DNA of 64,000 bases, from assembly GCF_006345805.1 (NCBI RefSeq), contig NC_043001.1, forward strand, positions 21,824,001-21,888,000, written 5' to 3'. The translations under genes were made by a program, and so were the position numbers. This document shows positions 562 through 48,872 of this stretch, one piece after another. This DNA is from Octopus sinensis (lineage: Eukaryota). Within the stretch, counting starts at the first letter, position 1. The number at the start of each line of letters is the position of its first letter. The notes under the pieces are model-generated. The model had not been told where the DNA came from, made no database searches, and saw nothing but the letters and a program-made list of their open reading frames with translations.

Positions 562-840
562 GTATCATTAGCATATCAGACAAAATGTGCACAGTATTTC
601 TTTTGGCTTATGTTCTGGGTTTAAATTCCACCAAGTTTTGCCAGCCCTTTATCATTTTAGGATCAATAAAGTAAAGTATCAGTCAATTACCAGTGTTGAT
701 GTAACTGACTTGCCCTTCCCTTCAAAACTGCTGGCCTTGTACCAAAATTAGAGTTACTACTGAACTTAGTCATTTTACAAATAAAAATGGTTATCACTGA
801 ATAATGTTTAAATATGAAGCAAAATAAAAAGATATATTAC

Positions 841-1081
841 GCTGTATAACAGATGCCAGCTGTGCCATCAAGAACTTCAGACTTCTCATCATCATAACAC
901 CAGTTTATGCTCAGAGATTTTGTCTTTTGGGTTTCTCTTGGGGGGTCGCAAGCAGTTACCCTGCCAAGCCAGGGATGGTTCAAACGATAGCCTTCTGGTA
1001 ACAGCTGATTTACAGAGGCTTCTCCACGTTCTATACGGCAACATACTGCACGAGCAAGGTGACCATGATCATAAAGATAAC
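841..1081 (-). CDS. ADAR: ADAR1 deaminase exon (241 nt), last exon visible in the window
   Basis: ttacag|GT acceptor and GC|gtaata donor. Encodes YLYDHGHLARAVCCRIERG...NHPWLGRV...LSINWCYDDEKSEVLDGTAG. The C-terminal part of the domain is absent from positions 1-840. Confidence 0.94.
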
Positions 1082-3281
1082 CTGTAAATATAACAAAATA
1101 GATAAAACATATATACACCCACCATGGTTTAAAGTAATTACTAGTAAGTACCAAAGTAATTGCTACTTCTAGTTCCTTCTATTATATTATAGAGATGGCC
1201 ATTCAGATAACATGTGTCAAAAATGAGAATTCAAGGAAAATAATGAGATGATAATAGTAAAAGCTAAAAGGCCCTAAGATATATTTAAACGTTTACAGGT
1301 TGTGTTTCATGATGGGAAGAGTATTTCAACATTTCAGACAAGGTTCATTGTTGAAGGGCCCTGCCTCTATAACTAAAATTCACTTCTCATCATCATACAC
1401 ATTTTACTGATCTGGGTTTTTTTTCCAATACAAACTAGTTTCCTGAGATTGTTATGTTATACTTTATATCTAAATCTTCTATGGAAGATTAACTATAACT
1501 GACTTTGATTACCTATTCACAGATTAATGATTTCAAATATTTCATTGTATTTCTACAGTGACTCAGTCCATCTAACAAATCGGGTATTGGTAATAAGTCA
1601 TCTGTTACTATTAGCCTCAGACAGACCAGTATCCTAATTACAGTGAGATTTGTCTCTCATTCACTGAATGCCATGAAATCAGAGCTAAATAGAGACACTT
1701 AAAAGTCTTTTGAAGCTAAGGAACCATTTAAGGTATCCATTTTTATATTTTTAATTATTTAATGTTCTCAATTTCTCAAACTGAAATATTTTCTTTTATT
1801 TACTGGGTCTGAAGGAAAGAAGTGTGCTCATGGTGTTTGCACACTCTCTGAGAATGGTAAGATTGATGTCATTAATGGTCCTCTTGAACTATTGCAACTC
1901 AGCACATGTGAAAAGGACGTGCGCAAGGAAGGAGTTCCAAAATGGCCAGCATTCTAGGAAAGAATTGGGCATTGTGATCACTATGAGCCCTGGGGTGAGG
2001 GGCACAAACAGGATAAGGAATAAGAGAGGAGTAGGACAAGAAAACTTGAGTGAAAGTAACAGAAGCCCAGCCAGCTTAAAAAGCAGATAGAGAAAATAGT
2101 TTGCCTGTATGCTTAAGGCTAAAGAATGTTGGAGTTATTTTATGCCCATCAACCAGGTGGCCTTTGTCTGGCCTTTGATAGGAAGTCTGTGTGACCAGCA
2201 GCAGTAGCAGACGTCCAAGAATTTGGACCTGGAGATCTCCATTTCCAGCGACTTCGAGGGCCACCTCCCAGTGGTGTCAGGCGTCAACGAAGAGCCCTCA
2301 ACTACAACGAGACGACCAAAGTTTTTTTTTTTCCCAAGGTCTGGGGTCTCCCGCCCCTAAGCCCTAGACCATCACCTAATCACCCTCACCCATCTTGTTG
2401 CTTAACAACAACAGCAGCAGTAGCACTGTCCCAGATGTGGGAACAATACTCCATTTTTGTCTTCACCTAAGCTTTGTAAAAGCTTGGTACTAAAGTAGCT
2501 TCTGGACCTGAAGTGGAAGGCCAATCTTCAGGATACAGCATGAGCTTTTAATAGGAGAGACCTTTGGTGAGAGTGAAACCCAAAATTTTGGCACAGTCAT
2601 AAGACCTTTAGTTGTGTGCTAACAAACAACTGGACAATTCAACAGATAAATACAATTTATTTAATTATATATTATACTGTATAAATTATACAAAGGTTAT
2701 TCAAAAGATAGTTGAAATTTCCTAAATTTATCAATACAGAAGGAAAATCACATGCAAAATATTTAATAACTATATCAATCATATCACTCTCCAGATTAAT
2801 ATGACAAAATTAAACTGCATATATAGAAAAGAAACAAAAACTGTAACTCTTTTGACCCCGTTTGAATTGAGTTTTAATACTGTTATTATTCACAATGTGT
2901 GAAACAAAATGTTATAGGGTAAAAATTTATATACAATACTTTAAATAATTTCAAATTTAGTTAAAACATTACAATGAAAATGTAATTAAAAAAAAACCCT
3001 TTAACCCTTTAGAATTGAAACTGGCCATATTTAACCCAAATATTCTACATGTTTTATGTTCAGATCAGCCAGATCTGGTCTCTCACACCTAATCTACAAT
3101 GTCATTTGAAAAATTAAACAATTACATCATTGAAATCTCAAAGCTATGAAATAATGCATGATTAATTCAAACAATGTGAATAAATACAAATTACATTTGA
3201 CAGTGTAATCTGAAAGCTACAGGATTAATTCATTGTCGATATTAAAATTAAAACAGTTTTAGATTAAGCATAAAGAAATAC

Positions 3282-3464
3282 CTAATGTCAGCGAATCTAA
3301 ATATATAGGCTCGATGAAGTGGCTCAGAAGAGCCCCCTGCAGACCAACAACGTTCCAGCGACAAATTTTATCAGAGCAAGACATTGTACGCAATCTTTCA
3401 CCACGTTGAATTCCATCCCATGTTTGTTCAGTGAAATCAGCATCGATTGGAATGGTTCCTTCGC
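3282..3464 (-). CDS. ADAR: ADAR1 deaminase exon with base-flipping loop and SCSDK motif (183 nt; not in the ORF track)
   Basis: atttag|GC acceptor and TAG|gtattt donor. Encodes [62 protein letters not shown]. Confidence 0.96.
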
Positions 3465-4097
3465 CTAAATAGGTAAAAAGACAAAAAAGAAACGGCTAAA
3501 TATTTTGATTTTATAATCTTTTTAAACTTGAGAAAACCTGCAAGATGGTAAAAATATCATAAAATTTTACAGCTTTGGGTTGTAAAAGATAAATAAAAAT
3601 AGAGAAGTCTTAAATGAGTTAAAATGATCACAGAGTAAAGAAACTTCTTGATCATCAGAATTTTATTTATTTATTTTATATTGCAATTTTTTTTAACAAA
3701 AAATAGCATCAGTGATTTACAGAACAAGTACGGTGTGTCTCTAATTTAGTGGTCTTCATTCAAAGGACAGGTTTTAACTTTTTTTTTTTTGCAGATGTAC
3801 ACAGTGAAGGACATGTAAACATATACACATGCACACACAATGGGCTTCTATTTTCAGTACAGTTTCCATCTATTAAATTCCATTTACAAGGTATTGGTTA
3901 ACCTAAGGTAATGATAAATGATATTTGCCTAAGATGCTACACAATGGGAACAAACCTGGTGCTATGTAGTAGTAATCACATGGACATGGTCTGATGAAAA
4001 AAATTAAATTTATCTGATAAATTCATTCTCCCACAAAAAATATTTGAAAATGTAATAGTGTACAAGATTTAAACTAATTCTTAAATTCTTCTATATA

Positions 4098-4707
4098 TTG
4101 GGTTATCCCATAAACAATGTGGTATTTTTCAATTGCATGAACTAAAAGTTGGAGGGGGATGTGATAAACCACCTGCATCAACTTGCTATAAAAACAGGTA
4201 GCAATTTTACCTTGTACTTATTCTTAGTGCTGTTTGATTTTAAAGTTATTTTTTCAAAGCTGTAATGGAAGTGACAAAGGAGCATATTTGGCATATTTTG
4301 CTTTATGAGTTCAATAAAGGCAATAATGCAATGGAAAGTGCTAGGAATACTAATGCAGGACATGGGATCAGACAATAACAGTAAAACAGTGTCAACAGTA
4401 GTTCCAAAAATTCTGAGACAGAAACTACAGCCTAGAAAACAAGCCTCATCCTGAAAGATCTATAGAGCTTGATGAGAACATCTTGCAAACTCTGGGGGAA
4501 CAAAATCCAATCATAACTGTTGAGGAACTATTAGAAAAGTCTGGATTTGGTCATTCAACCAGTCATTCAAGTCAGCACTAGAAGAAAAATTACCACCTTT
4601 GGTTTCAAGACTAAAAGTGTTCTTCCATCAGGATAATGCTCAGCCACATACAGTGAGGATGACACTTCAAAGGCTGGAGCAGTTTGAATGGGAAATGATG
4701 CCCCATG
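4098..4707 (+). mobile_element. Degenerate, internally deleted mariner transposon
   Basis: TA|TTGGGTTATCCC start. Broken frame MEVTKEHIWHILLYEFNKGNNAMESARN... and VFFHQDNAQPHT (second catalytic Asp motif). Stops, frameshifts, 3' end lost. Confidence 0.85.
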
Positions 4708-5002
4708 GATCTGAGCTTAGAACACGAAGCTGGAAGAAATGCTGCTAAGCATTTTGGCTGGCATGCAAAGAATTCTGCCAGCTCGAAATAGAAGCTAATA
4801 ATCCTTTCTGCTATAGGTACAAGGCTTGAAATTTTGTGGGGAGGGGGGACAGTTGATTACAGTGACCTCAGGGCTCAACTGGTATATTTTTCATCAACCC
4901 CCAAACGGATGAATGGCAAAGTTGCCCTTGGCAGAATTTGAACACAGAGAGTAGCATTGAATGACATGATGCTAAGTATTTTGCCTGGCATGCTAACGAT
5001 TC

Positions 5003-5230
5003 TTATTTCTTTATTGCCCACAAGGGGCTAAACATAGAAGGGACAAACAAGGACAAAGGTATTAAGTCGATTACATTGATCCCAGTGTATGACTGGTACT
5101 TAATTTATCGACCCAGAAAGGATGAAAGGCAAAGTCGAACTCGGCAGAATTTGAACTCAGAACGTAACGGCAGATGGAATACAGCTAAGCATTTCGCCCG
5201 GTGTGCTAACGATTCTGCTAGCTTTCCGCC
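5003..5230 (-). mobile_element. tRNA-derived SINE family B
   Basis: Full-length reverse complement of 145-375. Further - copies near 14570, 23973-24199, 36347-36579 and 55926-56135. Confidence 0.85.
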
Positions 5231-5557
5231 ATACACAGAAACTAATGATAAAAGATAAAAATATTCAGAGAAATTATTTAAAAATTTTAGCTTAGTTCTG
5301 AAAATGGGGTGATTTGTGCAAAAATCAGCTGGTTAGCAAACTATGACAACTAAATAGTATTGGATTCAGTGAAAGAGATTCATATTCACGTACATTTTAA
5401 TCTAATAATTTAATCATGGGCATTTCAACCTACAAGTTTTTACTAGATTTCGAGAATGAAATTATTGACTTCCTTAGAAGTGGTATTATAAGCTAACATA
5501 TCAATCATAAATTCTTTTTGTGCATACAATATATCAGAGTAGGAACCAGCATATATA

Positions 5558-6412
5558 CAGGGTATGATGGGTAAATTGTCGCCATTTTATATTTTTTTTA
5601 ATTTGCACATGTGCATCGTTTGTTTTTGATTTTGTCAACTACACAGTACAGTAGGGTCAACTGGGCACTGTCTGTGAGAAAAACAGTACCATGTCACTAT
5701 TCACTCTGCCAGAAATTTGTAAACGACATGCTCTACTGTTTGGTAGTCACACCAAAAGCCCCAATATGAACATTTCAGAGTGTTTTGGTGTCAATCTGAG
5801 GACAGTGCAGAGGATTTGGAAAGAGTTGGATGAGTCTAATGGTGATTATGAAGGTACAGCAGCTCGGAAAACTCACTCTGATTGTTCTGATAAGAAAAGA
5901 ACTCCTGAATTTGTTGGTGAGATCCAGGCCATGATTGATAACGATCCCTCCAAGTCAATCAGGTCCATCGTCAGGGACATAGGAGTGTCTGAGTTTCTTC
6001 TTAGGCACACAGTGCATGAAATCATTCAGTATTTCTCATACAAGATGAGAAAGGGCCAAGTTTTACCCGAAGCCATCAAGGCAAGAGGAAAGACTGTGCT
6101 ATAAAGCTTTTGAACAAACTCAAGCATCCCTCTCCAACCGAACATGCTTTGGTTTTTCTCAGATGAGAAAAATTTTTGTCACACAGAACAACTGTTGGCT
6201 TGCTGTGTCCCCAAAACATGTACCAAAAGCGATAAAAATCAAACATCCAGTCAACATCATGGTGTTTGGTGTGATCACTAGTGAAGGGGACATTCATCTT
6301 CTGACACGGCCACAGACTCAACATGGAGGCCTACATTAAGTGCCTGGAGGAGGTAGTGGTGCCCTAGGTCAAGAGAGTGGCTGCTGGAAGACCTATGTCT
6401 GACAACACACAC
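5558..6412 (+). mobile_element. Degenerate Tc1/mariner transposon (maT-like), 3' truncated
   Basis: TA|CAGGG start. ORF 5691-6104 is a paired-HTH region; after frameshifts come WFFSDEKNF and KHPVNIMVFGVITSEG. The last catalytic residue is not present, so DD spacing cannot be measured. Confidence 0.85.
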
Positions 6413-7244
6413 CCATGCCTGCACTTATTTATGGATTTTGAACATTTATGGATTACTTAAATGAGAAATATTAAAGTAGCAAGGAAGTATATATTAAACT
6501 GAGCATGAAATAAACCCTACTATTTTTAGGTTTTATCATAGCATTCATCCATAGATTTCATTAATATCAATAGTATGACAATAGTATATATATTTTTAGA
6601 ACAATCACTAGAGATAAAAGCAACATAGGTAGCAATGATAATAATAATATTGTTATCATAGTGACAGAAATTTCTGATATTTTGGATTGGTAACAAAGTT
6701 CACTAAAATGAAACTTAATAAATCAATAAACTGAAATAGAATTATAAATAGCAACTCTTTGGAGAAGTAATAGGATCTTTCTCCAGCATCATATTTACTC
6801 AGATGAGGCACTATTTGGAATAAAACTGTTGGGGAAATTTTGGCAATGTAGTTGATAGTTGTTAATCTTTATTAGTATTGGTACAGTAACTATAAAAATG
6901 ATGGGATTTATTTCTGCCTTCTTTCAGTAATCCTTAATGTTTTTGTTTTAAGCCTTGCTCTATTTTCTTTTTGTGTTTCATATTGTCTTCTTTCAGTTGT
7001 TCTTTTTACCTCCATTCACTCTCCTCCATTTTTCTCACTGCCTCCCTCCCATATTCCATTACTTCTCTTCCCCTCTATACATACAGATTTCCTTCTTTTT
7101 TCCCTTTCTCAATCAGATTCTGCCCCTACCTCTTTCTCTTCATTTCTCAATGTCTTCTCCCACTCATTTTGATAACATACATGAACCTCTCTCTTATTTT
7201 GTCTGTCATTTACTCATTCTCTATACCTCTTACTCTCTCTTTCT

Positions 7245-7633
7245 CTCTTTTACTTGTTTCAGTCATTTGACTGTGGCCATGCTGGAGCACCACCTTTAGT
7301 CGGGACTTATTCTTTGTAAGCCCAGTACTTATTCTATCGGTCTCTTTTGCCGAACCGCTAAGTGACAGCGACGTAAACACACCAGCATCGGTTGTCAAGC
7401 AATGCTAGGGGGACAAACACAGACACACAAACACATACACGCACACTTATATATATATATACATATATACGACAGGCTTCTTTCAGTTTCCGTCTACCAA
7501 ATCCACTCACAAGGCATTGGTCGGCCCGGGGCTATAGTAGAAGACACTTGCCCAAGATGCCACACAGTGAGACTGAACCCGGAACCATGTGGTTGGTTAG
7601 CAAGCTATTTACCACACAGCCACTCCTGCGCCT
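7245..7633 (-). mobile_element. tRNA-derived SINE family A with internal microsatellite
   Basis: Reverse complement of AGGCGCAGGAGTGGCTGTGTGG head, GGTTCAGTC B-box-like motif, CTTGGGCAAGTGTCTT core, GAAACAAGTAAAAGAG tail. Confidence 0.85.
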
Positions 7634-7653
7634 ATGTTATTTTATCACATTAA

Positions 7654-7873
7654 CCCTTTCGTTACCAACCTGGCTGAAACTGGCACTGGCTCTAAGTACA
7701 AATGTCTTGTTTTCATAAGTTTTGAATTAAAATCTTCCACCAAACCTTAGTCACAATTTATGTACCTAACACTAGCTTAATGATAACTAAGTTATTTTAC
7801 TAAATTCTTTGTTATATTTAAAGTAATTGAAAGAAACTCAGAGCATCTCAAAATAAATATAGTAACAAAAGGG
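7654..7873. mobile_element. piggyBac-type MITE family 1
   Basis: TTAA on both sides; TIR CCCTTTCGTTAC / GTAACAAAAGGG. Further copies at 20551-20770, 21426-21647 and 35307-35515. Confidence 0.88.
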
Positions 7874-8569
7874 TTAACACACTAATTCCCCAATACCTCT
7901 ATTGTAGAGTTCTTTCTTTCTTCTCTTACTACCTCACTGCCTTTCCCCACCCACACTTTTTATTACCATCCCTCCCAATATTTAACGATCTCTTGATGAC
8001 TGTTTGTCTCACAAGCTGCTGATTTCCAACCTTGTATGCTACCTACCATCATCATCATTTAGCATCCATCTTCCATGCTGGAATTGGGTAGCTGGATAGT
8101 TTGACAGGATCCAACAAGCCAGAGAAATGCATTTCATGGACTTTTTAAAAGGTGTTCGCAGAATTTAAATAACGACCAATTTCATTCACACACAGAGACC
8201 TGCTTTTCCCTAAACTCATTTACATTCGATTATTCATGCATAGTAACACTATACACAGTGAAACACGAGTGCTTCATTTCTTTCAAATCACTATTATTCA
8301 GTATCGCATTTCACACACAGGTAACAGACAATCTGTCCTTCACTCTGAAAGAGAAACCCTTTCTTGCTTGCAAAAGTAGGAGCTCCCTGAACATCTTTCA
8401 GCCTGTTTTATTATGCTTTCAGTACAGCCATCAAGTGTTCATCAAGGTTCAGTTCTCATTCTTCCTCTATTTATATAGTTCTCCAAGCTATAACAAGGGA
8501 ATGTGTAATACTAGCTGCTTGTGAGAAGTTCTATATGCTTATGAGGTAGTGCCAGACATAGGAATAAAA

Positions 8570-8860
8570 GAGATCTAGGAGTAAACTCAGCAAAGACTAA
8601 AGTTTTTGAAATACGGAAAGAAGAGAGGACTCCTCTGCTATCAAGGAAAAGGTTTTGCTAAGTACACAGGAAAAGTAACTGGTAGGAACTCCATACAGTG
8701 TACACAATGTGAGCTAATGAGTGGTCAAGAAATGACAGCTAATAAAGACCTTGTTACAGTAGTTAGTAGTGAGAGAACTAATAAAATTTTTTTTTTCAAT
8801 GTTTGAATGACTCCATAGAAGTAGTTGATAGCATCTGTTACCTAGGCAACCAAATCAGCT
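8570..8860 (+). mobile_element. RTE-clade LINE remnant (C-terminal RT region)
   Basis: Broken frames LGVNSAKTKVF, GRNSIQCTQCEL and DSIEVVDSICYLGNQIS. Confidence 0.7.
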
Positions 8861-9617
8861 GATATAATATAAAAACTAAGCCATAACCAATACAAACACA
8901 TTATAACAATGTTTCAACACAATAAAGATTGCTTTGAGTATAAAATTGTATGTCCATTCATTTGGTCATTTTTACATCCATTTTTGTATGACAGTATAAG
9001 TTAGATGAATATATTATTGAGGTATTGTTTTACAGCCAGATGTCCTTCCTGTCACTAACCCTAACCTGGTTTCAAGCAAGGGACCTATTTCTTATTTCTC
9101 ATGTCTTTGAAGACACAAAGTGAGCAGAAGACTTTTTTTTAACAGAAGAAATAACATCACTGCTTGTAATTCAGTAATTTTTAGAAGTTAAAATGTAAAC
9201 AAACAAACACACACACAAAATACTCATACACACAAACAACAGGCTCCTTTCAGTTTTCCATCTACCAAATATGCTCACAGGGTTTTGATCGGTGTGGGGC
9301 TATAGTAGAAGACACTTGCTTAAGATGCGACAAAGTGGGGCTGAACCTAAAACCACATAGCAAGTGAAAGTTATACAATTTTATCATTATTCTCTTTTAC
9401 TTGTTTCAGTCATTTGACTGCGGCCATGCTGGAGCACCGCCTTTATTGTAAACACAGTCAATACATATGACAAAATATAGAACATCCTGAGGAAAATATA
9501 CACATAACAAATTTAATTTTTTTGAAGTACATGTAGCCTTTGTCTTGATCAAATCAAACTAAGTCAAAATAAGAAAAAAATTACAAAGATACAATACAAA
9601 AAAACCCATACAAACAG

Positions 9618-9681
<64 letters not shown>

Positions 9682-9935
9682 CACACACACACACACACAT
9701 ATATAGACAGGCATACATGTTTTCACACATAAATGTATTCAGAGGAGTTGTTTTAAAAACCAATAATGATATAAAAAGATGAAAGGAATCCTGACATCTG
9801 TAACTCGTGTAACCCAACACCTTCAGAAAAAACACCATTAATCAATACCTGTGAGGAGACAAAAATATTACCAAAAGATATTTTTACCTGCAAATGACAC
9901 ACAACAACAAATAAATACAATAAAAGTGTACGAAC

Positions 9936-10042
9936 CTCCTTCCACTTTTGTTCGCAGCAATCCTTGTACACTGCTTGAAAAAGTTGGATTATGAATATGC
10001 TTGTTTTCCTCCTCCATTTTTGCATTACTTGAGTCAGTATCT
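9936..10042 (-). CDS. ADAR: ADAR1 deaminase exon, 5' binding loop region (107 nt)
   Basis: ttcacag|A acceptor and GAG|gttcgt donor. Encodes DTDSSNAKMEEENKHIHNPTFSSSVQGLLRTKVEG. Confidence 0.93.
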
Positions 10043-11879
10043 CTGTGAATTAGGAATAAATAAATCACCATCATCATTTAGTGTCTGCTTTTCATGCTGG
10101 CATGGGTTAGACGGCTGGACTGGAAACCGGTAAGCCAGAGAGCTGCACCAAGTTCCACTCTGGTTTGGCATGGTTTCTATGGTTGGATGCCCTTCTTAAT
10201 GCCAACTTATAGAAAAGACACAACAAAGATACATTGTGATGATGAGCCAATGACTCCAACCAATTAAAAAAAGGAGGATCCACCCTGTTAATAACTTGAT
10301 TCTGAATTCAATCAAGCAAGTTAAGACACTCAGCAGAGGCATCAGCCCAAAGATAGCAGCAATATTCAATGTAAGGTCAAATGGTAGCCTTACAGAGATA
10401 CAAGATACTGTCAAGCATAGGAAAATTTGTGAACACAGAAGAGAGATCCAACTTTCTTGGCAGCCGACATGGGAATGGACTGAACATATTTGCTTCAAGT
10501 GAGATCTGTGGTCACAGTCAATACCAAGAAGTTGGATACTGTAGTTTTCTGGAAGATCAACCTGCCCATAGTAATGAAAAGAGAAATGGCTGCCATAATG
10601 ATTAGGTGCATGGGTAGTGGACAGGGTGTTTTGTTCATGATCACAAGGTCATGGGTTCAATTCCTGAACCTAGTGGCTCATTATGTTTTGCTTGCTCCAG
10701 TCTGCTCAGCCGTAAATGAGTCCCTAGTGCAGTTCTCTTTCCCCCCTAGCTGTCACATCACTGATGCTCCACTGAGTCACAAGAGAGAGGGCCAAGAAGC
10801 TGTGTTTCTCTGTACATGACTACATAGGCACCTCAAAACAATTATCAAATGTGTAGTACAAGCTACCAAGTCATATGTGTTCGCAAATGACAGCTAAGCT
10901 TTATTCTATTTTATTGTATCATCAGTTAGTACAAACCATTCTGAGAATCTATCCTATTTTGTGATACTAATAAACAAAAGTGTTAAAGAGTATTAGAAAC
11001 GTAATTAGGATAAGAAACTGAAATTTCTTTTTGTCAAGATTCTCATCTTAAAAATGAGTCTACAGAATGGAAATTGAGAAGACAGTATATATTAAAATTG
11101 GGATAAATAGAATTGTTAGAAAAAGGAAGGAATAATTTTGATGTAGAAAGGAATCATCATCACTTAGCATCTGCTTTCCATGCTGACAATGGATGAGATG
11201 GTTTGAATGGAATTGGTAAGCTGGAGAGCTGTACCAGGTTCCAGTCTGATTTTGGTTTGTTTTCTATGGCTAGATCCCCTTCCTAATGCCAACCACTCCA
11301 AAAGTGTAGTGGGTGCCTTTTACGCATCACTGGCACAGGTTATTATTTTTATGATAAAAAATGCTATAAAAGTTTGAGCAGAACCTAAATGGTTCACAAC
11401 TATTAGAAAAGAAATTTATGCTCCAGTAAACAGGACTACCTTATAACTTAACACTTCATTTCAAATTCTTTTGAAACAACAGATTCCATTTCAAAGTATA
11501 TTTCTGCCATAAGAAACAAGATTAGCTACAAGAAATCCTGGTTGCAAACTTAACATAAGAAGGGAAAGATCTTTTAAAATGTTTTATGAAATCAATTAAG
11601 TTTTTATATGGAGTTTACTATCCATTCTTCATAACCTAATAATACAAAGTGATCTTCACTGGGGGAAGAAAAAACTAAACAGAAAACTGAAGTATTTTAT
11701 CTGTAGCTAACTTGTTATGACTAAAATATTTTCAGCATGGATCTAGTATATGCTGTGTAAATTTATTACCCTACAATAATCTATGTGTAGAAAGCAATTT
11801 TCAATTCTCCCTTTCAGTATTCATGTATATTTCATAAACATAGAATGCAATTGTTTTAGATAAGTAAAAAAAATATTAC

Positions 11880-12035
11880 CTGGGTGAAAAAAGAGCTCCA
11901 TCTCCACAAGGAGCAGTAGATATATATAAATGGAATGTTATATTGGTTTTAATCCGGCATATACTACGTTCACCTTTCTCGAAGAGATCATTGGGTACTT
12001 CTGCATCATACTCCAGTAAGTGTCTGTATAGATAT
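11880..12035 (-). CDS. ADAR: ADAR1 deaminase exon with PCGD motif (156 nt)
   Basis: ctgcag|A acceptor and CAG|gtaata donor. Encodes YLYRHLLEYDAEVPNDLFEKGERSICRIKTNITFHLYISTAPCGDGALFSPR. Confidence 0.96.
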
Positions 12036-12909
12036 CTGCAGAAGATAAAAATAATGGTTTTGCATAATAGTATCAGAAACATTTTGCCACCAATATTTCT
12101 ATGGAAATTATTTCCATTTTAATTCTCTGTTTGAATTTAGTCTATTGTACAGTCATTTTCCAAATAATACTTAAACATACAAACATACCACTTCTCAATG
12201 AACAGACAGCTCTTTATTAATTTCTTAAAAGGTCTTATATTTTCTTCACCTGTCACACAATATAATTCAAATACTAATATATCAATAGACCCATGCTTCA
12301 CTCGGGTTTTGGTGGTGGTGTTCTTTTGTTGTCTCCTTTTCCCTTTCTTCTTTTGTTTGTCTTCTTTGCCTGGTTCTTTTTATTGCCCTCTTCTTTTTCT
12401 TTTTTCATCTTTATCTTCTTTTTCTTCTTCCACTCTTTCTTTTCTCCTTTTCCCATATTCCTCACCATGGCAACCAAACGATACCCCCCCCCCGAGCGAC
12501 TTGCAGCCCTCCTCACACCATTGTCCACCCCATTTTAGCCCCCCCCCCCGTGTAAATTTTGGCGCCAATCCAACCCCATCTACCGCCCCTTAAACTGTTC
12601 CCATCCCAAAATGAGACAAATAACCAAGAAATCAAACAACTTTTTTGCATTTCAGCTTTATAGACATTGATATATCAATATCTTATAAGCTAATTTACAA
12701 TAAGCAAGTGATTAAGTATATAAGTATCTCAAAACAGATCAGCTTCCTAGAAAAAGCTGTTACATTTTTATTTATTTACTCATTTACTTCCTTTTGTTTT
12801 TGAGGATATGTCTCCAAAGAAAAGAGTCTGTGAAGCAGAATGTAGACACCAAATCTGCAGCAGCAGTAGTACCTGTCGTCATTGTTGTCATCACCACCAA
12901 TACCTGTTG

Positions 12910-13100
12910 TCATCATCATCATCAGTTAATGTCCATTTTCCAATGCTAGCATGGGTTGGATAATTTGGCAGGAGCTGGCAAGCCAAAGGACTATGCCAAA
13001 CTTAACCATCAGCTTTGGCATGGTTTCTATGGCTGGATGACCCTCCTAATGCCAATCACTTTACAGAGCATACTGGGTACTTTTTTTATGGACCAGCACC
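12910..13100 (-). mobile_element. Short RTE-tail repeat
   Basis: Reverse complement of the same family. Further - copies near 10066, 11155, 20800, 28600, 30203 and 63900. Confidence 0.8.
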
Positions 13101-14827
13101 AGCACCAGCAAGGTTACCATATAACTTGGAAGGCAAAGACCCCTCAACTAAGAGGAGTAATGGTATTGAGTGGGGTGGCTTTGTAGCAGATGATGAGTGA
13201 TTAAACTATGATAGCTGGACAGAAATAGGTGTCTTGCTGTAGAGGAAATACATGGTTATCCCAGGTGAAATGTGAGAGAGTGGGGGTGGGGGAATAGACA
13301 ATTCATTATTTTTCCAAGTTCAATTAAGTGAAATCACAAGTCTGCTTCTAGTCTTTTGATTACAGAAAGATATTCCTAAATGCTTTTCTGCTATAATGTA
13401 AGAATTCTGATTTCCTCCTTAGCAGTTGCAAGGTCATATTGTTCAGTTTTAATTATTTTTTGTGCTATTAAAACAAATGTATATATATGAATAAAATTCA
13501 ACCATTTCAAAATTGAAATTATAAATTTCCCAAATTCTAATATTTCTTCACATATTTTGATGCAAAGGAATACTAAAGCTCCCAAATGCACTACCCTGTA
13601 TTACGAGGTGCGGTGAAATATATTGAGATACTGCAGACACTCCATTTTCTATTTGTTGTAACTTTCCCGGGCTGGAACTGTGCCACAAGCATAGTTGTTA
13701 CTGACATGATTTATTGGCTTGTGCTAAATTAATGGCATAGTAAAAATATAGACTTGGCTTTTTTTATATGTTTTGTTCAGCCTTGGCAAAACTTTTGTTG
13801 TATAGGTTTTATGGATAATCTATTGTTATTCCTTGAATTTTCCTGTGTCCATTATCTTCTATAATGTTGTATGAGCCAAAGTTTCAGGTAATGCTTTAAG
13901 CTGGAGAACACTGTGAATGAAATACTGTGCCAAGTATGGTGAATATCAAAAATATTGAAGAATCAATACTTTTATAGAATATTACAGAAAATGAAAAATT
14001 CTTCCATTAAATAGTTTCAGACATGCATATTTTTTATATTAAAAAAATAATGAAAATATTTCAATTGTTACATACTGAAATCAAAATTATTTGCTTTTGT
14101 TTATATTTTGGGAAAGCACTTTCTCAGTGACATAGTTATTCTTTACAATAAGATTCAGAAAGTTGCTTAATATCATTAAGCTAATTTGATCACCTTCTGT
14201 TGGTAGGTTGTAGTCAAAATGACTGGAATCTCGATAAAATCTTTTTGAAAACAACTAATAACATTTATCTTTTTCTTGTTTCAGTCATTAGACTGTGGCC
14301 ATGCTAGGGCACCACATTAATCAGTATTCTTTTGTATTATTTTGATAAATAAAATGTATAAAAGGTATATATCTTTCCTTAAAATGATTAACAGAGAACC
14401 TGTTCCTTTCAACCTTCATTCGAGATGATGATATGCACAACGTAATTCAATGCATAAATTACAGGATTTGTGAGTCAAGACATACATTCAAATAAATAAT
14501 GAACACTAATAATTTCACAAAAATGAAATTGATAACAATGATAATAATGATGATGATAATAATAATCCTTTTTACTAAAGGCACAAGGCCTGACATTTTT
14601 GGGGAGGATACTAGTTGATTACATCAACCCCGAAAAGATGAAAGGCAAAGTCAACCTCAGTGGAATTTGAACTCAGAATGGAAGGACAGACAAAATACTG
14701 CTAAGCATTTTGCCTAGTATGCTAACAATTCTGCTGGCTCACCACCTTAAATGGTAATAATAAAAATAATAATATAAAGGAATTAACAAAGCAAAACTAA
14801 ATCTGAAATCTGAAGGGAAAAACTTAC

Positions 14828-14921
14828 CTCAGAAAACCTCGGCGTGTGATTATTTCAGCATGAGAGTCATTGACACTGTTGCCTTCCAAACTCAAATGAT
14901 CACCGGTTAAACAGCGGTTAC
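14828..14921 (-). CDS. ADAR: ADAR1 exon with catalytic HAE motif (94 nt; too short for the ORF track)
   Basis: ctttag|GT acceptor and GAG|gtaagt donor. Encodes [32 protein letters not shown]. Confidence 0.96.
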
Positions 14922-15541
14922 CTAAAGGTGTAATAGTTTTTCATTTATAACTTGAACAAACACAAAATACACAGACACATCAAAATAGCTGTAATGTTGA
15001 TTGCCAAAGCTAAACTAAATTCTGTTCTATGTTGCCAACTACATTTATTGTAGTAAGATTTCTATGCACCAACCAGATCTATCTTTTCCAAATGGGCACC
15101 ACCTGATGGTTTTTTTTTTTTTTTTTTACTACACACACAAATATATTGCATGGCAAGATAGAAGTAACATGCTCAACTGCCATATTGCACCTTGCACAGA
15201 TAATTACTATAAAGAGCAATTTACAACACAATCTGAATTAAAGACTTATAGGTTACTTCAATGCATTCAACTGACTACTGCTATACCATAGGTCACAATT
15301 AGATAAGCTGATGAGAATTTTTCACAACAATACTTATTGCTTTAATGAACTATAAAACATGTCTATAGAAATATAAACATAACATACACACACTTAACTC
15401 ATTTTTCCTGGGTCTCTTTTAATCTCCTTTCCTCTCTTCTTTCTTTTCCCAGCCTCTTCTGGGCTTTCTTCTACTATCCAACAAAGGACTATGCCAGAAA
15501 CATATTTTTATTCTATAGCAATTTTATCCTTCTTTGAGCCT

Positions 15542-15706
15542 ACTACACTCTCGGAGTGGTTGGCGTTAGGAAGGGCATCCAGCTGTAGAAACTCTGCCAG
15601 ATCAAGATTGGAGCCTGGTGCAGCCATCTGGTTCGCCAGCTCTCAGTCAAATCGTCCAACCCATGCTAACATGGAAAGCAGACGTTAAACAATGATGATG
15701 ATGATG
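15542..15706 (+). mobile_element. Short RTE-tail repeat
   Basis: TTGGCGTTAGGAAGGGCATCCAGCTGTAGAAA...(GAT)n. Further + copies near 15940, 22200, 49545 and 61630. Confidence 0.85.
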
Positions 15707-16675
15707 AGCCTGTTGGCAGTTGTTTTTTATTATTTGTAATTGCTTTGCTTTATCATATGCTTGCATGGATCTTCCATATTTATTCAACCAATACTTTGGA
15801 TCACCTTAATTTTTGGATTATTTTAACACTTTAGTTATCATTTGATTACCATCTCAAATTACATTGGATCTTCATCATTGGTCACATACACACAGAATTC
15901 CCCAGCTGTTTTTTTGTCTTGCAAGTTACATGGCAACCTCACTAGTGCCAGTGGTATGAGAAAAGTATCCAATACACTCTGTAAAGTGGTTGACATTAAG
16001 AAGGGCATCCAGCTGTAGAAACCATGCCAAAGATAACACTGGAGATAAAAGCAGCCCTGTACACACTTACAAACAAAGAAGGAACAGCTGTATATGCATA
16101 TTTCAACTCCAAGTTTGGTCAACTGTCCACTTTCATTAACTACCCGCAACACCACTGCTTATGTACCCACTGATATTAATCACTAAATAATGTAGGCCAA
16201 TTTGCATGTTTAATGTCCTTTTGGCAGATAATTGGAATATTAAATGAGGTAGTTCACATTAATGGCAAAGTTTCACTAGTAATTAATTCTAAATAATTAA
16301 ATTAAAACTATTTAAATAAATTATCATGTTTCAACTAATTTAAGATATTACTGCTATCATTAAGACAAAATTGATGTTGAATTTATGTAAATATTGTAAA
16401 TATTCAGACCATAAAGGTAAAAAGGTGAAAAAAAAAAAAGGGACAAGGGTTGTAAAATGTATGTTAAAAGATAATTGCAGTCTAAATTATTGATCATTGT
16501 GATCTCTTTTAGCAATAACTGTTAAAGCAAGGGATCAATTATAGATCAAATTACTTAAATATTAAGTATCATTTGGAATTGATAATTTAATAGTATTCTT
16601 CAAGTTATTATTACTAAAGAAGGTTACAAGGGGTCTGTAAGTTAAAACCTTGATATGAACTTGTTCTTTACTCAC

Positions 16676-16859
16676 CAGTTCCAACACTGATAACAATTCC
16701 CGTATCCGTTGGTGATCGCTTCATCACCAAAGCGGCGATTACTTTTCTCCCAGCAAGGTTCTCGGGGATTTGCAAGGCAATATTGTTAAATGCCTGGTGA
16801 CTCAAGGCAGCCATTTTATCGAAATGTGTCATTTCTGCAGGTGGAATTGTTTTCAATGC
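16676..16859 (-). CDS. ADAR: ADAR1 exon, start of deaminase domain (184 nt)
   Basis: ctatag|GCA acceptor and ACTG|gtgagt donor. Encodes ALKTIPPAEMTHFDKMAALSHQAF...GRKVIAALVMKRSPTDTGIVISVGTG. Confidence 0.95.
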
Positions 16860-16940
16860 CTATAGAGTAAAAAAATAAAATAAAATAAAAAAAATAAAAT
16901 AAGAATTAAAAATAGAAAATAAAGATTTACAAAGTAATTT

Positions 16941-18768: not shown

Positions 18769-18913
18769 TGAGACGGTGTTCTCTAACTGATACTGTCCTT
18801 CAGCAATGAGAATGCGCAATGTCAGATCGGCTGCCTCTTTCTTACCATCCTTCTTACTGTTGCACTCCATACTGGGGAACTGGCGTTTACCAAGAATCAC
18901 GGCGAATTTAAAC
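18769..18913 (-). CDS. ADAR: ADAR1 exon, C-half of dsRBD (145 nt)
   Basis: cacacag|G acceptor and TCA|gtaagt donor. Encodes FKFAVILGKRQFPSMECNSKKDGKKEAADLTLRILIAEG with the KKxxK motif; phase matches the upstream donor. Confidence 0.95.
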
Positions 18914-38090: not shown

Positions 38091-38244
38091 TACACTTAGC
38101 AGCTTGTTAAATCTAAATAACAGGAATATATCTGCAACTAATGAAAGAATTTTCTTATAAAAAGTAAATATAATCATATCTTAATAAAAAAAAGTAAATT
38201 AAGTCTATTAAAAATAAAAAAAAAAAAAAAAGAAATTTACTTAC

Positions 38245-40496
38245 AATGGTCGATGAGAAGGTCCTCTGTGTGATAAGAGCTTAAATTCAACAGGTAAATG
38301 GCGCTGTTGAGCATATTCCATCAATGCACTTACAGGATTTTTGTTAAGGGCAGCAAAACTCTCTGAAGTGATCTGCAGATTTGGTGCCAGTGAGTCAATA
38401 CCAGCCTTGTCAGCTCCTTTCTCAGCCGCTTTGTCGGCCAACGCCTGCGCTACTGCTGCTGCCTTGATTTCAGCTAAAGTTGGAGTTTTAGTTTCAGTAG
38501 TTTCACTTGAAGAGGAAATGGATGTATTCTTAAGAAGATCTTGGATATTATCAACTGAATTCTTTTTATTATTTGAGTTGTTAACAGTGGAATTTGAATT
38601 AGACTGAGATGAAGATTGATTATTTGAAGCATTTTGCTTTGGACTGTTGGCCCTTTGTTTTGAGCTCGAAGCAGATTTGGAATTAGAAGATCCTTGCTTA
38701 GAGCCTGAGGAACCTTTTGACCCAGAGCCTTTAGAATTTGAAGCAGTTTGTTTTGAAGATGACGTCTGCTTAGAACTTCCAGCAGACTGTTTAGAACTTG
38801 AATTACTTTGCTTGGGACTTGGAGCAAATGATGTAGTCGATGACGTTGAAGTGGAATTCGTAGCTGGTGCCCTTGAGCTTTCTATCAGTGTGGTGCTATT
38901 GTTCCACCTAGAATTCTTTGACGTTGAGGACGACAAGGATGCTGACGAAGATGATGACGACTGGTTGAATTCCTTAGAAGAATTGCTTGAATTAGATACA
39001 GCAACATCTCCTTTAAAGACCGGATCTTTTGCAAGGAGCTCATGAGGGGAAGGAGGTAGATGAGAATTTCTACTCGCCTGATTTGATGCTGATTTCTGTT
39101 CGTTTGAAGACCCAGGTTGTTTTTGGGAATTATTATTTTGGTAATAAGCACTTTTCATGTTGCTAGAGCTGATGCCATTGTCCGCCAGTAGAACATGTGG
39201 AGGCGCAGGAGGTTGCCGATTTCCACTAGAAAACTGACGAGACATGGCAGAGTTCACAGATGAAGAACTTTTTCCAGCAGGGATTTCAGTTTCGTAACTG
39301 GCTGCGTTCTTTGCCATAATATAAATATCTTCACCAATAGTGGTGACTATTTTCTTTTTACATAAACTATGCAAATGCTTTTGAGTTTCTTCGAGAGAAA
39401 GGCCTGTATGTTTAGCTATTTCACGTGATTTAGCAGAACCATTCATGGTTTTATCAAGGAAGGATATGATTTTAGCATGTGGGTCATGCGGGTCAGAATT
39501 GCAAGCCTTTATATTTGAGTTCCGTTTGGGAGAGATTTGATCGTGGGGCGAATGGTCCTTCGAGTCTTTCTTCAAGGAACTCAGGTGTACGCGAGACATA
39601 TCCGGACCCTCTCGGTCCATCTGATGGTAACAAACAGGCATATCTCCAAAAGAATGATTTGCATAGTTCATAAAATTACTAGGGTATGATTGATAGTTTC
39701 CGTCATAATGTCTTTCACGATCATCCTGCAAGTCTATCTTTTTCTGTTGGATGACCATCCTGTCATTACTTTTTAATGGCATCATGGTACCATTTGAAGA
39801 ATTTTGCATGTTAAAGTTATCACAATTTCTCCTTCGTGGCTTACCACTTTGTTTAGATTCAGAAGTTACAGGAAAATGTCCTGAATAGCCTTGGCCATAT
39901 CCACCACTATGTGGATAATTAGCAATTGCTGTTTCCAGGGCCTCACAATCATCTGGGCTGCAACTTTCTGAACGTAATCTATTTGGAGAACTAGTGTTTC
40001 CAATAGAGAGAATTTCGGTATCTTTACTACTGTGACTGTAGATGAGAGATTCATTCTTACTTTCTGAGTATATATGAGATGGTGGACAGAAACCATGCCA
40101 TTCACTTCTATAGGTTGATCGTTTTGAACGCTGGTAATTATTATTGGGAGTCTTCTGTCCTCTATAACTTTCACGGTTATTAGCATAGAAATTTGGTGGT
40201 GTTCTTGATACTGGGCCATGCTGATAGATTCCTGGACTACTAGAATAATGAGACTCATTCTGGTTATAATTTGTATGAGATGCAGGTGGATCAGCAATAA
40301 CCCATGTTGGCGGCTGCATGCCGTGCTTTCTTATCAAACCACGTCTATCCATGCTGTACAAAGTCGGATTCACTTCTTTTCGTGAACGAACACTTACAAG
40401 ACGTGCCAGTTCCATGGTCTTTACAGGGTGAGTCTTATGGACTAGATAATTCATTATGCGGTCTTCCCACTCGGGATGTACATTCAAATTTGTTTC
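38245..40496 (-). CDS. ADAR: ADAR1 large exon (2252 nt): Z-alpha, low-complexity linker, second winged helix, Ser-rich region, N-half of dsRBD
   Basis: 748-aa ORF. Acceptor ctgtag|GAAACA at 40496 (phase 0), donor CCATT|gtaagt at 38245 (phase 2). KEVNPTLY...PPTW Z-alpha signature; NKNPVSALMEYAQ...GPSHRP dsRBD start. Confidence 0.95.
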
Positions 40497-48345: not shown

Positions 48346-48396
48346 CTTCGCAAGAATGGGCAAGGTTTGAAGATACCATTTCTTGGTAAGGTCAAC
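48346..48396 (-). CDS. Candidate 5' exon of ADAR1 containing an ATG at 48379 (MVSSNLAHSCE-G)
   Basis: Long T-rich tract then ttttag|G acceptor, AAG|gtcaga donor, ATG in GAAATGG context. Frame-compatible with the large exon via 46374-46399. No transcript evidence. Confidence 0.5.
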
Positions 48397-48767: not shown

Positions 48768-48872
48768 AGAGTCTAAACCAATATTCTTCCTTCCGTACTG
48801 ATGGCTCCATCCAGAGAATAAGCTCAAATGTTCATTCATGTTGAGGATCTTCTAGAAGGCTCAGTTGAAAAT
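48768..48872 (-). other. Candidate upstream exon (5'UTR or alternative start, ATG at 48839)
   Basis: ttttgtag|A acceptor and weak TCT|gtaatt donor. More GC-rich than its flanks. Confidence 0.3.

What the first reader, a model, noticed from the sequence alone, without database searches (positions are those of the whole stretch)
38245..40496. ADAR1 with about 750 aa of mostly disordered N-terminus but only one dsRBD
Seen: one 2252-nt exon encodes Z-alpha (40475-40293), about 270 aa of low-complexity linker, a second winged helix (39485-39315), about 270 aa rich in Ser/Asn/Lys, then half a dsRBD. Only one dsRBD precedes the deaminase. Known: human ADAR1 has three dsRBDs, and a Ser-rich N-terminal extension has been reported for squid ADAR1, so the extension itself is not new. 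Inference: its internal modular structure (separate findings below) may compensate for the missing dsRBDs in a lineage with very extensive recoding.
Basis: partly seen in the sequence, partly recalled or inferred. Interest (0 to 1): 0.7.

Follow-up and report, generated by a model that had tools for sequence, protein, structure and literature searches.

The report
Octopus ADAR1 big N-terminal exon
This is the large second coding exon of the octopus RNA-editing enzyme ADAR1. Its long serine-rich N-terminus and single RNA-binding domain are already published for squid, but it also holds a strongly conserved second winged-helix domain that the published description says is missing.

Summary
Window 38245-40496 (minus strand) is one 2252-nt exon with AG/GT splice sites. 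It is 100% identical to Octopus sinensis ADAR1 (XP_029636176).

The exon encodes, in order:
- a canonical Z-alpha domain;
- a ~270-aa low-complexity linker;
- a second winged helix;
- a ~265-aa Ser/Asn/Lys-rich stretch;
- an Ala-rich helix;
- the first half of the only dsRBD.

No other dsRBD-like or Z-alpha-like piece exists anywhere in the 64 kb, in any of six frames.

The architecture is already known. Vallecillo-Viejo et al. 2023 described it for squid ADAR1 (Z-alpha, 623-aa "serine-rich domain", one dsRBM, all in one exon).

The "missing dsRBDs / compensation" reading is not supported. One dsRBD is the usual non-vertebrate ADAR1 state (gastropods, bivalve, annelid, scorpion, hemichordate, crinoid; Grice & Degnan 2015).

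The part that goes beyond the literature is the make-up of the "SRD":
- The second winged helix is 88% identical between octopus and squid, with dN/dS 0.03 at saturated dS.
- It matches a profile of non-cephalopod ADAR1 Z-alpha-like domains (E about 1e-8; hhalign probability 95%).
- It lacks all the Z-contact residues, so it is Z-beta-like.
- A PPxPxELL motif is shared with a gastropod ADAR1.

The parts
38245..40496 (-). Large coding exon of ADAR1 (2252 nt; aa 73-822 of O. sinensis isoform X1, aa 56-805 of O. bimaculoides X2)
   Evidence: Open frame; splice sites; tblastn to P0001 99.6%; 0 differences from P0128
40293..40472 (-). Z-alpha domain with the Z-contact residues kept (K-E-V-N-P-T-L-Y ... 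P-P-T-W)
   Evidence: Pfam z-alpha E 1e-7; PDB hits to human ADAR1 Z-alpha/Z-beta; alignment; dN/dS 0.014
39492..40292 (-). Linker 1, about 265 aa, S/N/Y/R-rich and low in hydrophobic residues
   Evidence: Composition; pLDDT below 40; dN/dS 0.06
39867..39992 (-). Conserved island inside linker 1 (SSPNRLRSESCSPDDCEALETAIANYPHSGGYGQGYSGHFPV); function unknown
   Evidence: 93-97% octopus-squid identity in 30-aa windows; dN/dS 0.027; short helix in the model
39306..39479 (-). Second winged helix (wHTH2): a degenerate Z-alpha-family, Z-beta-like domain without Z-contact residues
   Evidence: Pfam FaeA 23.8 bits, above the gathering score; 21.2 bits / E 1.2e-8 to a profile of 94 non-octopod ADAR1 Z-alpha-like domains, against a maximum of 11.0 in 2000 shuffles; hhalign probability 95%; 88% identical to squid; dN/dS 0.03
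39450..39452 (-). AAA lysine codon in helix 1 of wHTH2, homologous to squid K414 (published as edited at all three positions)
   Evidence: Residue-number mapping; codons; PMC10278661
39174..39218 (-). Proline motif, copy 1 (RQPPAPPHVLLADNG)
   Evidence: Invariant between octopus and squid; hit by the motif profile
39006..39062 (-). Proline motif, copy 2 (HLPPSPHELLAKDPVFKGD), shared with Pomacea ADAR1
   Evidence: BLAST to Pomacea aa 54-70, 65% identity; coleoid-only profile gives 14.8 bits against a maximum of 7.7 in 1340 shuffles
38556..38831 (-). Ser/Lys/Asn-rich core with [S/P]KQ repeats. Composition is conserved; sequence is not
   Evidence: S 36%, K 12%, 7 [SP]KQ units; squid 29% / 12% / 5 units; 23-27% identity in windows; no DNA tandem repeat
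38400..38486 (-). Ala-rich helix before the dsRBD. It contains the AAA codons homologous to squid edited K750 and K754 (38430-38432, 38418-38420)
   Evidence: Helix 674-692 in the model; 90-93% identity; codons
38247..38372 (-). N-terminal extension and first half of the single dsRBD
   Evidence: Pfam dsrm positions 1-29; dsRBD profile E 8.8e-12; best match is human ADAR1 dsRBD3
18769..18913 (-). Next exon: second half of the dsRBD
   Evidence: tblastn; dsRBD profile positions 33-69; acceptor
804..16868 (-). Deaminase-domain exons (16674-16868, 14818-14922, 11879-12043, 9916-10044, 3280-3465, 804-1166). The last coding part is off the window
   Evidence: tblastn; Pfam A_deamin 3.7e-100 on P0001
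48346..48396 (-). Optional 17-aa micro-exon (VDLTKKWYLQTLPILAK) of isoforms X1 and X3
   Evidence: tblastn 17/17; isoform sequences
48768..48839 (-). Alternative first coding exon (MNEHLSLFSGWSHQYGRKNIGLDS) of isoform X3
   Evidence: tblastn; P0130 N-terminus

Best explanation
The region is the large second coding exon of the Octopus (sinensis-type) orthologue of ADAR1, the A-to-I RNA-editing deaminase. It is the octopus counterpart of the published squid sqADAR1.

Shown here:
- The protein reads Z-alpha, linker, degenerate second winged helix, two proline motifs, a Ser/Lys/Asn-rich basic tract, an Ala-rich helix, one dsRBD (dsRBD3-like) and the deaminase.
- The single dsRBD is the ordinary non-vertebrate ADAR1 state, not a loss.
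- The published 'serine-rich domain' is a composite. It consists of two low-complexity linkers around a strongly constrained winged helix that belongs to the Z-alpha family by profile comparison. That helix has replaced every residue that contacts Z-form nucleic acid.

Inferred:
- The dsRBD and deaminase carry out substrate binding and catalysis.
- Z-alpha targets Z-prone dsRNA.
- The second winged helix acts like vertebrate Z-beta: a structural or partner-binding module rather than a Z-binder.
- The net-positive, phosphorylatable Ser/Lys tract adds unspecific, tunable affinity for RNA or RNA granules.
- Editing of the AAA lysine codons in helix 1 of the winged helix and in the Ala-rich helix tunes these modules.
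For: Identity and structure of the gene.

Only one dsRBD in 64 kb. No further Z-alpha-like piece.

Same composition as the published squid SRD. Here it is 645 aa, S 21%, K+R 11.5%, net charge +20. The paper gives 623 aa, about 20% S, about 12% K/R, charge +20.2.

The comparison sequence P0002/P0136 is squid:
- Ten published sqADAR1 residue numbers match at one constant offset.
- Three published sqADAR1 qPCR oligos match its contig at 72 of 72 nt. The 30-nt probe, the one oligo tested, has no match in the octopus window within 3 mismatches.

Constraint: synonymous sites are saturated (pS about 0.7), yet dN/dS is 0.014 for Z-alpha, 0.03 for wHTH2, 0.06-0.10 for the linkers and 0.022 for the dsRBD end.

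wHTH2 belongs to the Z-alpha family by profile. It hits winged-helix Pfam models above the gathering score. The Z-contact residues K/N/Y/PP/W are replaced by E/Q/H/ED/Y.

Single dsRBD in other invertebrates: and PMC4323055.

dsRBD3 affinity.

Motif shared with Pomacea.
Against: - No confident 3-D model of wHTH2 was obtained: pLDDT 55.7 with a two-sequence alignment, and Foldseek was meaningless.
- Pfam's own z-alpha model does not hit wHTH2. Single-sequence searches give only insignificant hits, to SelB winged helices and PKZ Z-alpha at E 0.2-0.5. 'Z-alpha-derived' therefore cannot be separated cleanly from 'some winged helix'.
- No positional orthology to a particular Z-alpha copy of other invertebrates was found.
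- All functional roles for wHTH2, the motifs and the Ser/Lys tract are inference.
- In vitro, squid ADAR2 edited more of the tested Kv1 sites than squid ADAR1.
- Nautilus and decapodiform sequences other than one squid could not be obtained.
Confidence: 0.85

Rival explanations
1. One reading: coleoids lost two dsRBDs, and the long modular N-terminal extension evolved to compensate. On this view it is part of why recoding is so extensive in this lineage.
For: - The basic, Ser/Lys-rich tract (net +15 in linker 2) could bind RNA unspecifically.
- The region upstream of the dsRBD is more than twice as long as in the gastropod, bivalve and annelid models sampled: 775-792 aa against 89-386 aa.
- Squid ADAR1 is the most highly expressed ADAR in the nervous system.
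Against: - One dsRBD is the rule in non-vertebrate ADAR1, including lineages with little recoding (PMC4323055). There is no loss to compensate.
- The tract between the PPxPxELL motif and the dsRBD is about as long in Pomacea, Gigantopelta and Perionyx: 170-220 aa against 224 aa.
- In vitro, squid ADAR2 edits more of the natural Kv1 sites than ADAR1.
- There are no functional data on the extension.
Confidence: 0.1
2. The 'second winged helix' is not a domain. It is a short helical patch in a disordered region that matches helix-turn-helix profiles by chance, as the published squid description implies (wholly disordered SRD, no Z-beta).
For: - AlphaFold confidence is low and Foldseek finds nothing.
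- The Pfam z-alpha model is silent on this segment.
- The only non-ADAR relative in 1.8 billion representatives is a repeat protein of generic winged helices.
Against: - The segment is 88% identical between octopus and squid at saturated synonymous divergence, with dN/dS 0.03. That is as constrained as Z-alpha and the dsRBD.
- A profile built without any cephalopod sequence scores it 21.2 bits, against at most 11.0 for 2000 shuffles. hhalign gives probability 95%.
- The Pfam FaeA winged-helix hit is above its curated cut-off.
- It has the highest pLDDT of the exon in the shallow model, higher than the genuine Z-alpha.
Confidence: 0.12
3. Further dsRBDs exist but are encoded by unannotated or alternatively spliced exons, as with the optional extra dsRBD of squid ADAR2.
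For: - Squid ADAR2 has such an optional exon.
- This gene does have optional 5' exons.
- Exon 1 and the far 5' intron lie outside the window.
Against: - A dsRBD profile built from 1-, 2- and 3-dsRBD ADARs, run with all filters off against every stop-free piece of 15 aa or more in six frames of the 64 kb, finds only the two known halves.
- RefSeq isoforms X1-X3 of two octopus species, and Argonauta, have one dsrm.
- The cloned squid cDNA has one.
Confidence: 0.03

Closest known systems
Squid ADAR1 (sqADAR1, Doryteuthis pealeii; Vallecillo-Viejo et al. 2023, PMC10278661)
   Same: Orthologue. It has the same order Z-alpha, Ser-rich region, one dsRBM, deaminase. Z-alpha, the Ser-rich region and the dsRBM start lie in one large exon behind a very long first intron. 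Composition and charge are the same. The exon product is 77% identical. The edited lysine codons are AAA in both species.
   Different: The paper treats the 623 aa as one disordered domain with no homologues and states that Z-beta is absent. Here the region resolves into two linkers, a constrained Z-alpha-family winged helix, two proline motifs (one shared with a gastropod) and an Ala-rich helix.
Human ADAR1 p150
   Same: Z-alpha with the same Z-contact residues, a second degenerate winged helix downstream (Z-beta), a dsRBD3-like dsRBD with its N-terminal extension, and an ADAR1-type deaminase.
   Different: Human ADAR1 has three dsRBDs and short linkers. Human Z-beta keeps N, PP and W and loses only the Tyr. 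The octopus second winged helix has lost all of them, and it is separated from its neighbours by about 270 and about 320 aa.
Other invertebrate ADAR1 (for example sea urchin, Saccoglossus, Antedon: three Z-alpha-like domains + one dsRBD; gastropods Pomacea and Gigantopelta: one dsRBD)
   Same: One dsRBD before the deaminase, and one to three winged helices of the Z-alpha family. The later copies drift towards generic winged-helix profiles such as TrmB and FaeA. The PPxPxELL motif and a Ser-rich linker before the dsRBD are present in Pomacea.
   Different: Their N-termini are 290-390 aa, not about 790. Their linkers are less Ser-rich (13-18% against 32% in linker 2) and not Lys-rich.
Vertebrate Z-beta domain
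   Same: A second Z-alpha-family winged helix within ADAR1 that lacks the residues needed for Z-form binding.
   Different: Direct orthology is not shown. Similarity is at profile level only.

Membership tests
[quoted passage not shown] | C-terminal A_deamin domain with the HAE proton-shuttle/zinc motif and the zinc cysteines | tested here: met
   Pfam A_deamin E 3.7e-100 on P0001. DSHAE, TAPCGD and SCSDK are present. Six deaminase exons map into the window.
[quoted passage not shown] | At least one dsRBD N-terminal to the deaminase | tested here: met
   One dsrm at aa 776-841 of P0001, split over two exons in the window. It carries a KKxxK motif, SKKDGKKEA.
[quoted passage not shown] | Z-alpha domain (this distinguishes ADAR1 from ADAR2 and ADAD) | tested here: met
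   Pfam z-alpha E 1e-7. The K, N, Y, PP and W contact positions are conserved in the alignment.
[quoted passage not shown] | Groups with ADAR1 rather than ADAR2 | tested here: met
   The best solved-structure matches are human ADAR1, while the ADAR2 dsRBD scores far lower (28 bits). The closest named homologues are ADAR1. No tree was built here. A tree is published for squid.
[quoted passage not shown] | A-to-I deaminase activity on dsRNA | not testable with these tools
   Shown in vitro for the squid orthologue (PMC10278661, abstract). Not shown for octopus.
Coleoid sqADAR1-type ADAR1 with serine-rich region | About 620-650 aa of Ser- and Lys/Arg-rich, net-positive sequence between Z-alpha and the single dsRBD, all in one exon | tested here: met
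   645 aa, S 21%, K+R 11.5%, net +20, against the published 623 aa, about 20%, about 12%, +20.2. It is a single exon.
Coleoid sqADAR1-type ADAR1 with serine-rich region | Orthology to the cloned squid gene | tested here: met
   77% identity across the exon to P0002. P0002/P0136 was identified as squid ADAR1 by 10 of 10 residue numbers and 72 of 72 nt of published oligos.
Vertebrate-type ADAR1 architecture (Z-alpha, Z-beta, three dsRBDs) | Three dsRBDs | tested here: not met
   One dsrm and no further dsRBD-like piece in 64 kb.
Z-alpha / Z-beta winged-helix family (for the second winged helix) | Significant sequence-profile similarity to Z-alpha-family domains | tested here: met
   21.2 bits, E 1.2e-8, to a profile of 94 non-octopod ADAR1 Z-alpha-like domains; shuffles reach at most 11.0. 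hhalign probability 95%, E 3.6e-8. Caveat: the Pfam z-alpha model itself gives no hit, and generic winged-helix models do.
Z-alpha / Z-beta winged-helix family (for the second winged helix) | Winged-helix fold (three helices plus a beta-hairpin wing) | tested here: inconclusive
   The three helices are predicted at the expected places, but the wing is modelled as a helix and pLDDT is 55.7. Foldseek is uninformative.
Z-alpha / Z-beta winged-helix family (for the second winged helix) | Z-form contact residues (human K169, N173, Y177, P192, P193, W195), which define a Z-binding Z-alpha | tested here: not met
   The aligned positions read E, Q, H and, in the wing, EDIY. It should therefore not be filed as a functional Z-alpha. 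At most it is Z-beta-like.
Z-alpha / Z-beta winged-helix family (for the second winged helix) | Binding to Z-DNA or Z-RNA | not testable with these tools
   Needs CD B-to-Z conversion or EMSA.

The most novel reading that the evidence does not exclude
The coleoid 'serine-rich domain' is not a de novo, wholly disordered domain that replaced Z-beta and two dsRBDs. It is an in-place expansion of two ancestral inter-domain linkers around a retained, strongly constrained Z-beta-like winged helix, which the literature says is absent, and a proline motif shared with gastropod ADAR1. A lysine codon that squid edits at all three positions sits in helix 1 of that winged helix, and two more sit in the conserved Ala-rich helix next to the dsRBD. 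Self-editing would then tune folded modules rather than bulk charge.
Probability: 0.55. Interest if true: 0.45.

Novelty: already known. Interest (0 to 1): 0.3.

Why it matters
ADAR1 is one of the two active editing enzymes behind the exceptional mRNA recoding of coleoid cephalopods, and its odd N-terminus is a candidate explanation.

The architecture itself is published, so the finding as written adds nothing new, and its 'compensation for lost dsRBDs' premise is wrong.

The modest gain is a sharper map for experiments. The 620-650-aa region is not one featureless domain. It has defined, testable modules, each with exact coordinates:
- a Z-beta-like winged helix;
- two proline motifs;
- a basic [S/P]KQ tract;
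- an Ala-rich helix.

Three reported self-editing lysines fall inside conserved modules. This tells people making deletion or point constructs where to cut.

Tried and rejected
1. AlphaFold2 on the whole exon product and on the second winged helix alone. Only a two-sequence alignment could be supplied. Confidence was low everywhere, including the genuine Z-alpha, so the models are used only for relative pLDDT and helix positions.
2. Foldseek of the small model against the PDB. No match reached E 0.001, and the result was rejected as meaningless.
3. Single-sequence search of the winged helix against the PDB. Only insignificant hits, to SelB winged helices and PKZ Z-alpha.
4. Search of 1.8 billion representatives with the winged helix. 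It found only the squid orthologue and two unrelated repeat proteins, so no deep alignment could be built.
5. Protein searches returned almost nothing, and one search returned no hit longer than 867 aa. No Nautilus or further decapodiform ADAR1 was obtained.
6. Assigning the second winged helix to the first, second or third Z-alpha-like copy of other invertebrates. Scores were 14-20 bits to all of them, so no assignment was possible.
7. Orthology to the N-terminal winged helix of Gigantopelta ADAR1. BLAST E 0.39 only, so it was left open.
8. The PPxPxELL motif beyond Pomacea (annelid, tick, others). Scores with a coleoid-only profile lie within shuffle noise, so it is claimed only for Pomacea.
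9. Local RNA structure around the edited-lysine codons. z = +1.99 and -1.44, nothing unusual.
10. DNA tandem repeats in the Ser/Lys tract. None of note, so the repetitiveness is at composition level only.
11. Exon 1 (MANSS...) is not in the window.
Full report
**What is there**

Window 38245-40496 on the minus strand is open for 750 codons. The next longest stop-free stretch in any frame of the 64 kb is 173 codons. A polypyrimidine tract and AG precede position 40496, and GTAAGT follows 38245.

Its translation is identical to Octopus sinensis ADAR1 isoform X1 (XP_029636176; 0 differences). It differs at 3 residues from the O. bimaculoides protein. An alternative first exon in the window also carries the O. 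sinensis spelling. The window is therefore O. sinensis-type, and the gene is an annotated RefSeq model.

**Gene map**

- After the big exon comes a 19-kb intron.
- The second half of the dsRBD lies at about 18769-18913.
- Six deaminase exons follow, down to 804. The 3' end is off the window.
- Upstream lie an optional 17-aa micro-exon (48346-48396) and an alternative first coding exon (48768-48839).
- The main exon 1 is not in the window. This fits the very long first intron reported for squid.

**Domains**

Pfam on the exon product gives z-alpha at aa 9-69 (E 1e-7). It gives a winged-helix hit at aa 342-384 (FaeA-like, 23.8 bits, gathering score 20.7), with HTH_Crp_2 and TrmB hits up to aa 394. 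It also gives the first 29 positions of dsrm at aa 721-749.

The full protein has one dsrm and one A_deamin.

I built a dsRBD profile from ADARs with one, two and three dsRBDs. I ran it with filters off against all 2842 stop-free six-frame pieces of the window. It finds only the two known halves. A Z-alpha-family profile likewise finds only the two winged helices of this exon.

The single dsRBD is closest to human ADAR1 dsRBD3 (63.9 bits, against 52.6 for dsRBD1 and 40.9 for dsRBD2). The alignment runs into the N-terminal extension.

**Already published**

Vallecillo-Viejo et al. 2023 (PMC10278661) describe squid ADAR1 as follows:
- It has one Z-alpha, a 623-aa 'serine-rich domain' (SRD) and one dsRBM.
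- The SRD is about 20% Ser and about 12% Lys/Arg, has charge +20, carries 67 phosphorylation motifs and is predicted to be disordered.
- The protein has 'no Z-beta'.
- All of this sits in exon 2.
- They state that coleoids in general have it.

The octopus equivalent measured here is 645 aa, 21% Ser, 11.5% Lys+Arg, net +20. A 2024 review repeats the description. The headline of the finding is therefore known.

**The 'missing dsRBDs' premise**

Every non-vertebrate ADAR1 with a full Pfam row scanned here has exactly one dsrm. These are Pomacea, Gigantopelta, Tegillarca, Perionyx, Centruroides, Saccoglossus and Antedon.

Grice & Degnan 2015 infer one ZB + one dsRB + AD as ancestral, with three dsRBDs in vertebrates.

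Nothing was lost in coleoids, and lineages with little recoding share the state. The compensation idea loses its premise. What remains is the published, untested speculation that the basic tract adds RNA affinity.

**Identifying the comparison sequence**

Only one other N-terminal orthologue could be found: P0002, a genomic exon, and P0136, a transcript.

Ten residue numbers published for sqADAR1 are N110, K414, K750, K754, K833, H942, E944, R948, R949 and C996. All of them match P0136 at a single offset of +5, and at no other offset.

The three published sqADAR1 qPCR oligos match its contig at 72 of 72 nt. The 30-nt probe, the one oligo tested against the window, has no match there within 3 mismatches.

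P0002/P0136 is therefore Doryteuthis pealeii ADAR1 or a very close relative. Synonymous sites between octopus and this squid are saturated (pS about 0.7).

**Internal structure of the 'SRD'**

Octopus-squid identity is far from uniform. dN/dS by segment:

| Segment | dN/dS |
|---|---|
| Z-alpha | 0.014 |
| Island in linker 1 (aa 169-210) | 0.027 |
| Second winged helix | 0.030 |
| Ala-rich helix plus dsRBD half | 0.022 |
| Linker 1 | 0.06 |
| Linker 2 | 0.10 |

The [S/P]KQ-rich core (aa 556-647) keeps its composition: 36% against 29% Ser, 12% Lys in both, and 7 against 5 [S/P]KQ units. It is only 23-27% identical in 30-aa windows. There is no DNA-level tandem repeat.

**The second winged helix**

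This segment covers exon aa 340-397, window 39306-39479.

- It is 88% identical to squid.
- A profile built only from 94 Z-alpha-like domains of non-octopod ADAR1s scores it 21.2 bits (E 1.2e-8 for one sequence). The maximum in 2000 shuffles is 11.0.
- hhalign of the coleoid alignment against that profile gives probability 95%, E 3.6e-8.
- In the alignment, the Z-contact positions (human K169, N173, Y177, P192, P193, W195) read E, Q, H and EDIY.

It therefore cannot be called a functional Z-alpha. It resembles Z-beta in being a degenerate second copy.

Caveats:
- Pfam's z-alpha model does not hit it.
- Single-sequence PDB hits are insignificant.
- The structure models are of low confidence and Foldseek is uninformative.
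- No particular copy in other invertebrates is its clear counterpart.

In the shallow whole-exon model it is nevertheless the most confident stretch, ahead of the genuine Z-alpha. This contradicts the published statements that squid ADAR1 'lacks Z-beta' and that the SRD has no homologous domain anywhere.

**Proline motifs**

HLPPSPHELLAKDPVFKGD (39006-39062) and a weaker copy, RQPPAPPHVLLADNG (39174-39218), are invariant between octopus and squid.

A coleoid-only profile of the first motif scores Pomacea canaliculata ADAR1 aa 54-70 (PPPPPKELIQRDPVFSGD) at 14.8 bits. The maximum over 1340 shuffled N-termini is 7.7 (BLAST).

Similar strings in an earthworm, a tick and others are within noise, and I do not claim them.

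Downstream of the motif, Pomacea, Gigantopelta and Perionyx have 170-220 aa of 13-18% Ser low-complexity sequence before the dsRBD, against 224 aa in octopus. That half of the extension is thus not coleoid-specific in length, only in its Ser/Lys richness.

The total N-terminus (about 790 aa) is still more than twice that of the sampled non-coleoid models. Some of those models may be 5'-truncated.

**Self-editing sites**

Squid K414, K750 and K754, each reported as edited at all three A's, map as follows:
- K414 maps to the Lys in helix 1 of the second winged helix (FLDKT).
- K750 and K754 map to two Lys in the Ala-rich helix (ALADKAAEKG).

All three are AAA codons in the squid contig and in the octopus window. 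Local RNA folding there is unremarkable.

**Verdict**

- The architecture is already known from squid and annotated in RefSeq.
- The compensation inference rests on a vertebrate-centred premise that the data do not support.
- The residual novelty is modest. The 'SRD' is a composite with a conserved Z-beta-like winged helix and an older proline motif.
- Function of these modules is inferred, not shown.

Noticed in passing
window 48346-48396 (-) and 48768-48839 (-): An optional 17-aa micro-exon (VDLTKKWYLQTLPILAK) and an alternative first coding exon (MNEHLSLFSGWSHQYGRKNIGLDS) lie 8 kb upstream of the big exon. They correspond to RefSeq isoforms X1 and X3. The squid transcript P0136 carries a diverged version of the micro-exon (ANLIKKRNHPFLPLVFK). 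All isoforms keep Z-alpha, so this is not a p150/p110-type switch.
   Followed up: partly
window 39450-39452, 38430-38432, 38418-38420 (-): AAA lysine codons homologous to squid K414, K750 and K754, which are published as edited at all three positions. They lie in helix 1 of the second winged helix and in the Ala-rich helix, not in the Ser-rich low-complexity part. Whether octopus edits them was not checked, since no RNA data were available here.
   Followed up: partly
window 38245-38499 (-), last 85 codons of the exon: Octopus-squid synonymous difference is clearly lower here (pS 0.46) than in the rest of the exon (about 0.7). This hints at an RNA-level constraint. A local fold of this stretch is no more stable than shuffles (z +1.99).
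   Followed up: partly
window 39867-39992 (-): A 42-aa island in linker 1 (SSPNRLRSESCSPDDCEALETAIANYPHSGGYGQGYSGHFPV) is 93-97% identical to squid, with dN/dS 0.027. A basic KPRRR patch follows it. No family match was found and its function is unknown.
   Followed up: no
whole window: The exon product matches O. sinensis exactly and differs at three residues from the O. bimaculoides RefSeq protein (G/S at exon aa 135, S/N at 443, Q/P at 467). So few amino-acid differences across 750 residues of largely low-complexity sequence is notable.
   Followed up: partly
P0124 (not in the window): A 1085-aa protein made of more than ten tandem FaeA/MarR-like winged helices. It was the only non-ADAR hit for the second winged helix among 1.8 billion representatives (E 1.3e-7). 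Its origin is unknown.
   Followed up: no
window 38200-38240 (-): A long poly-T run lies directly after the exon's donor site, in the 19-kb intron.
   Followed up: no
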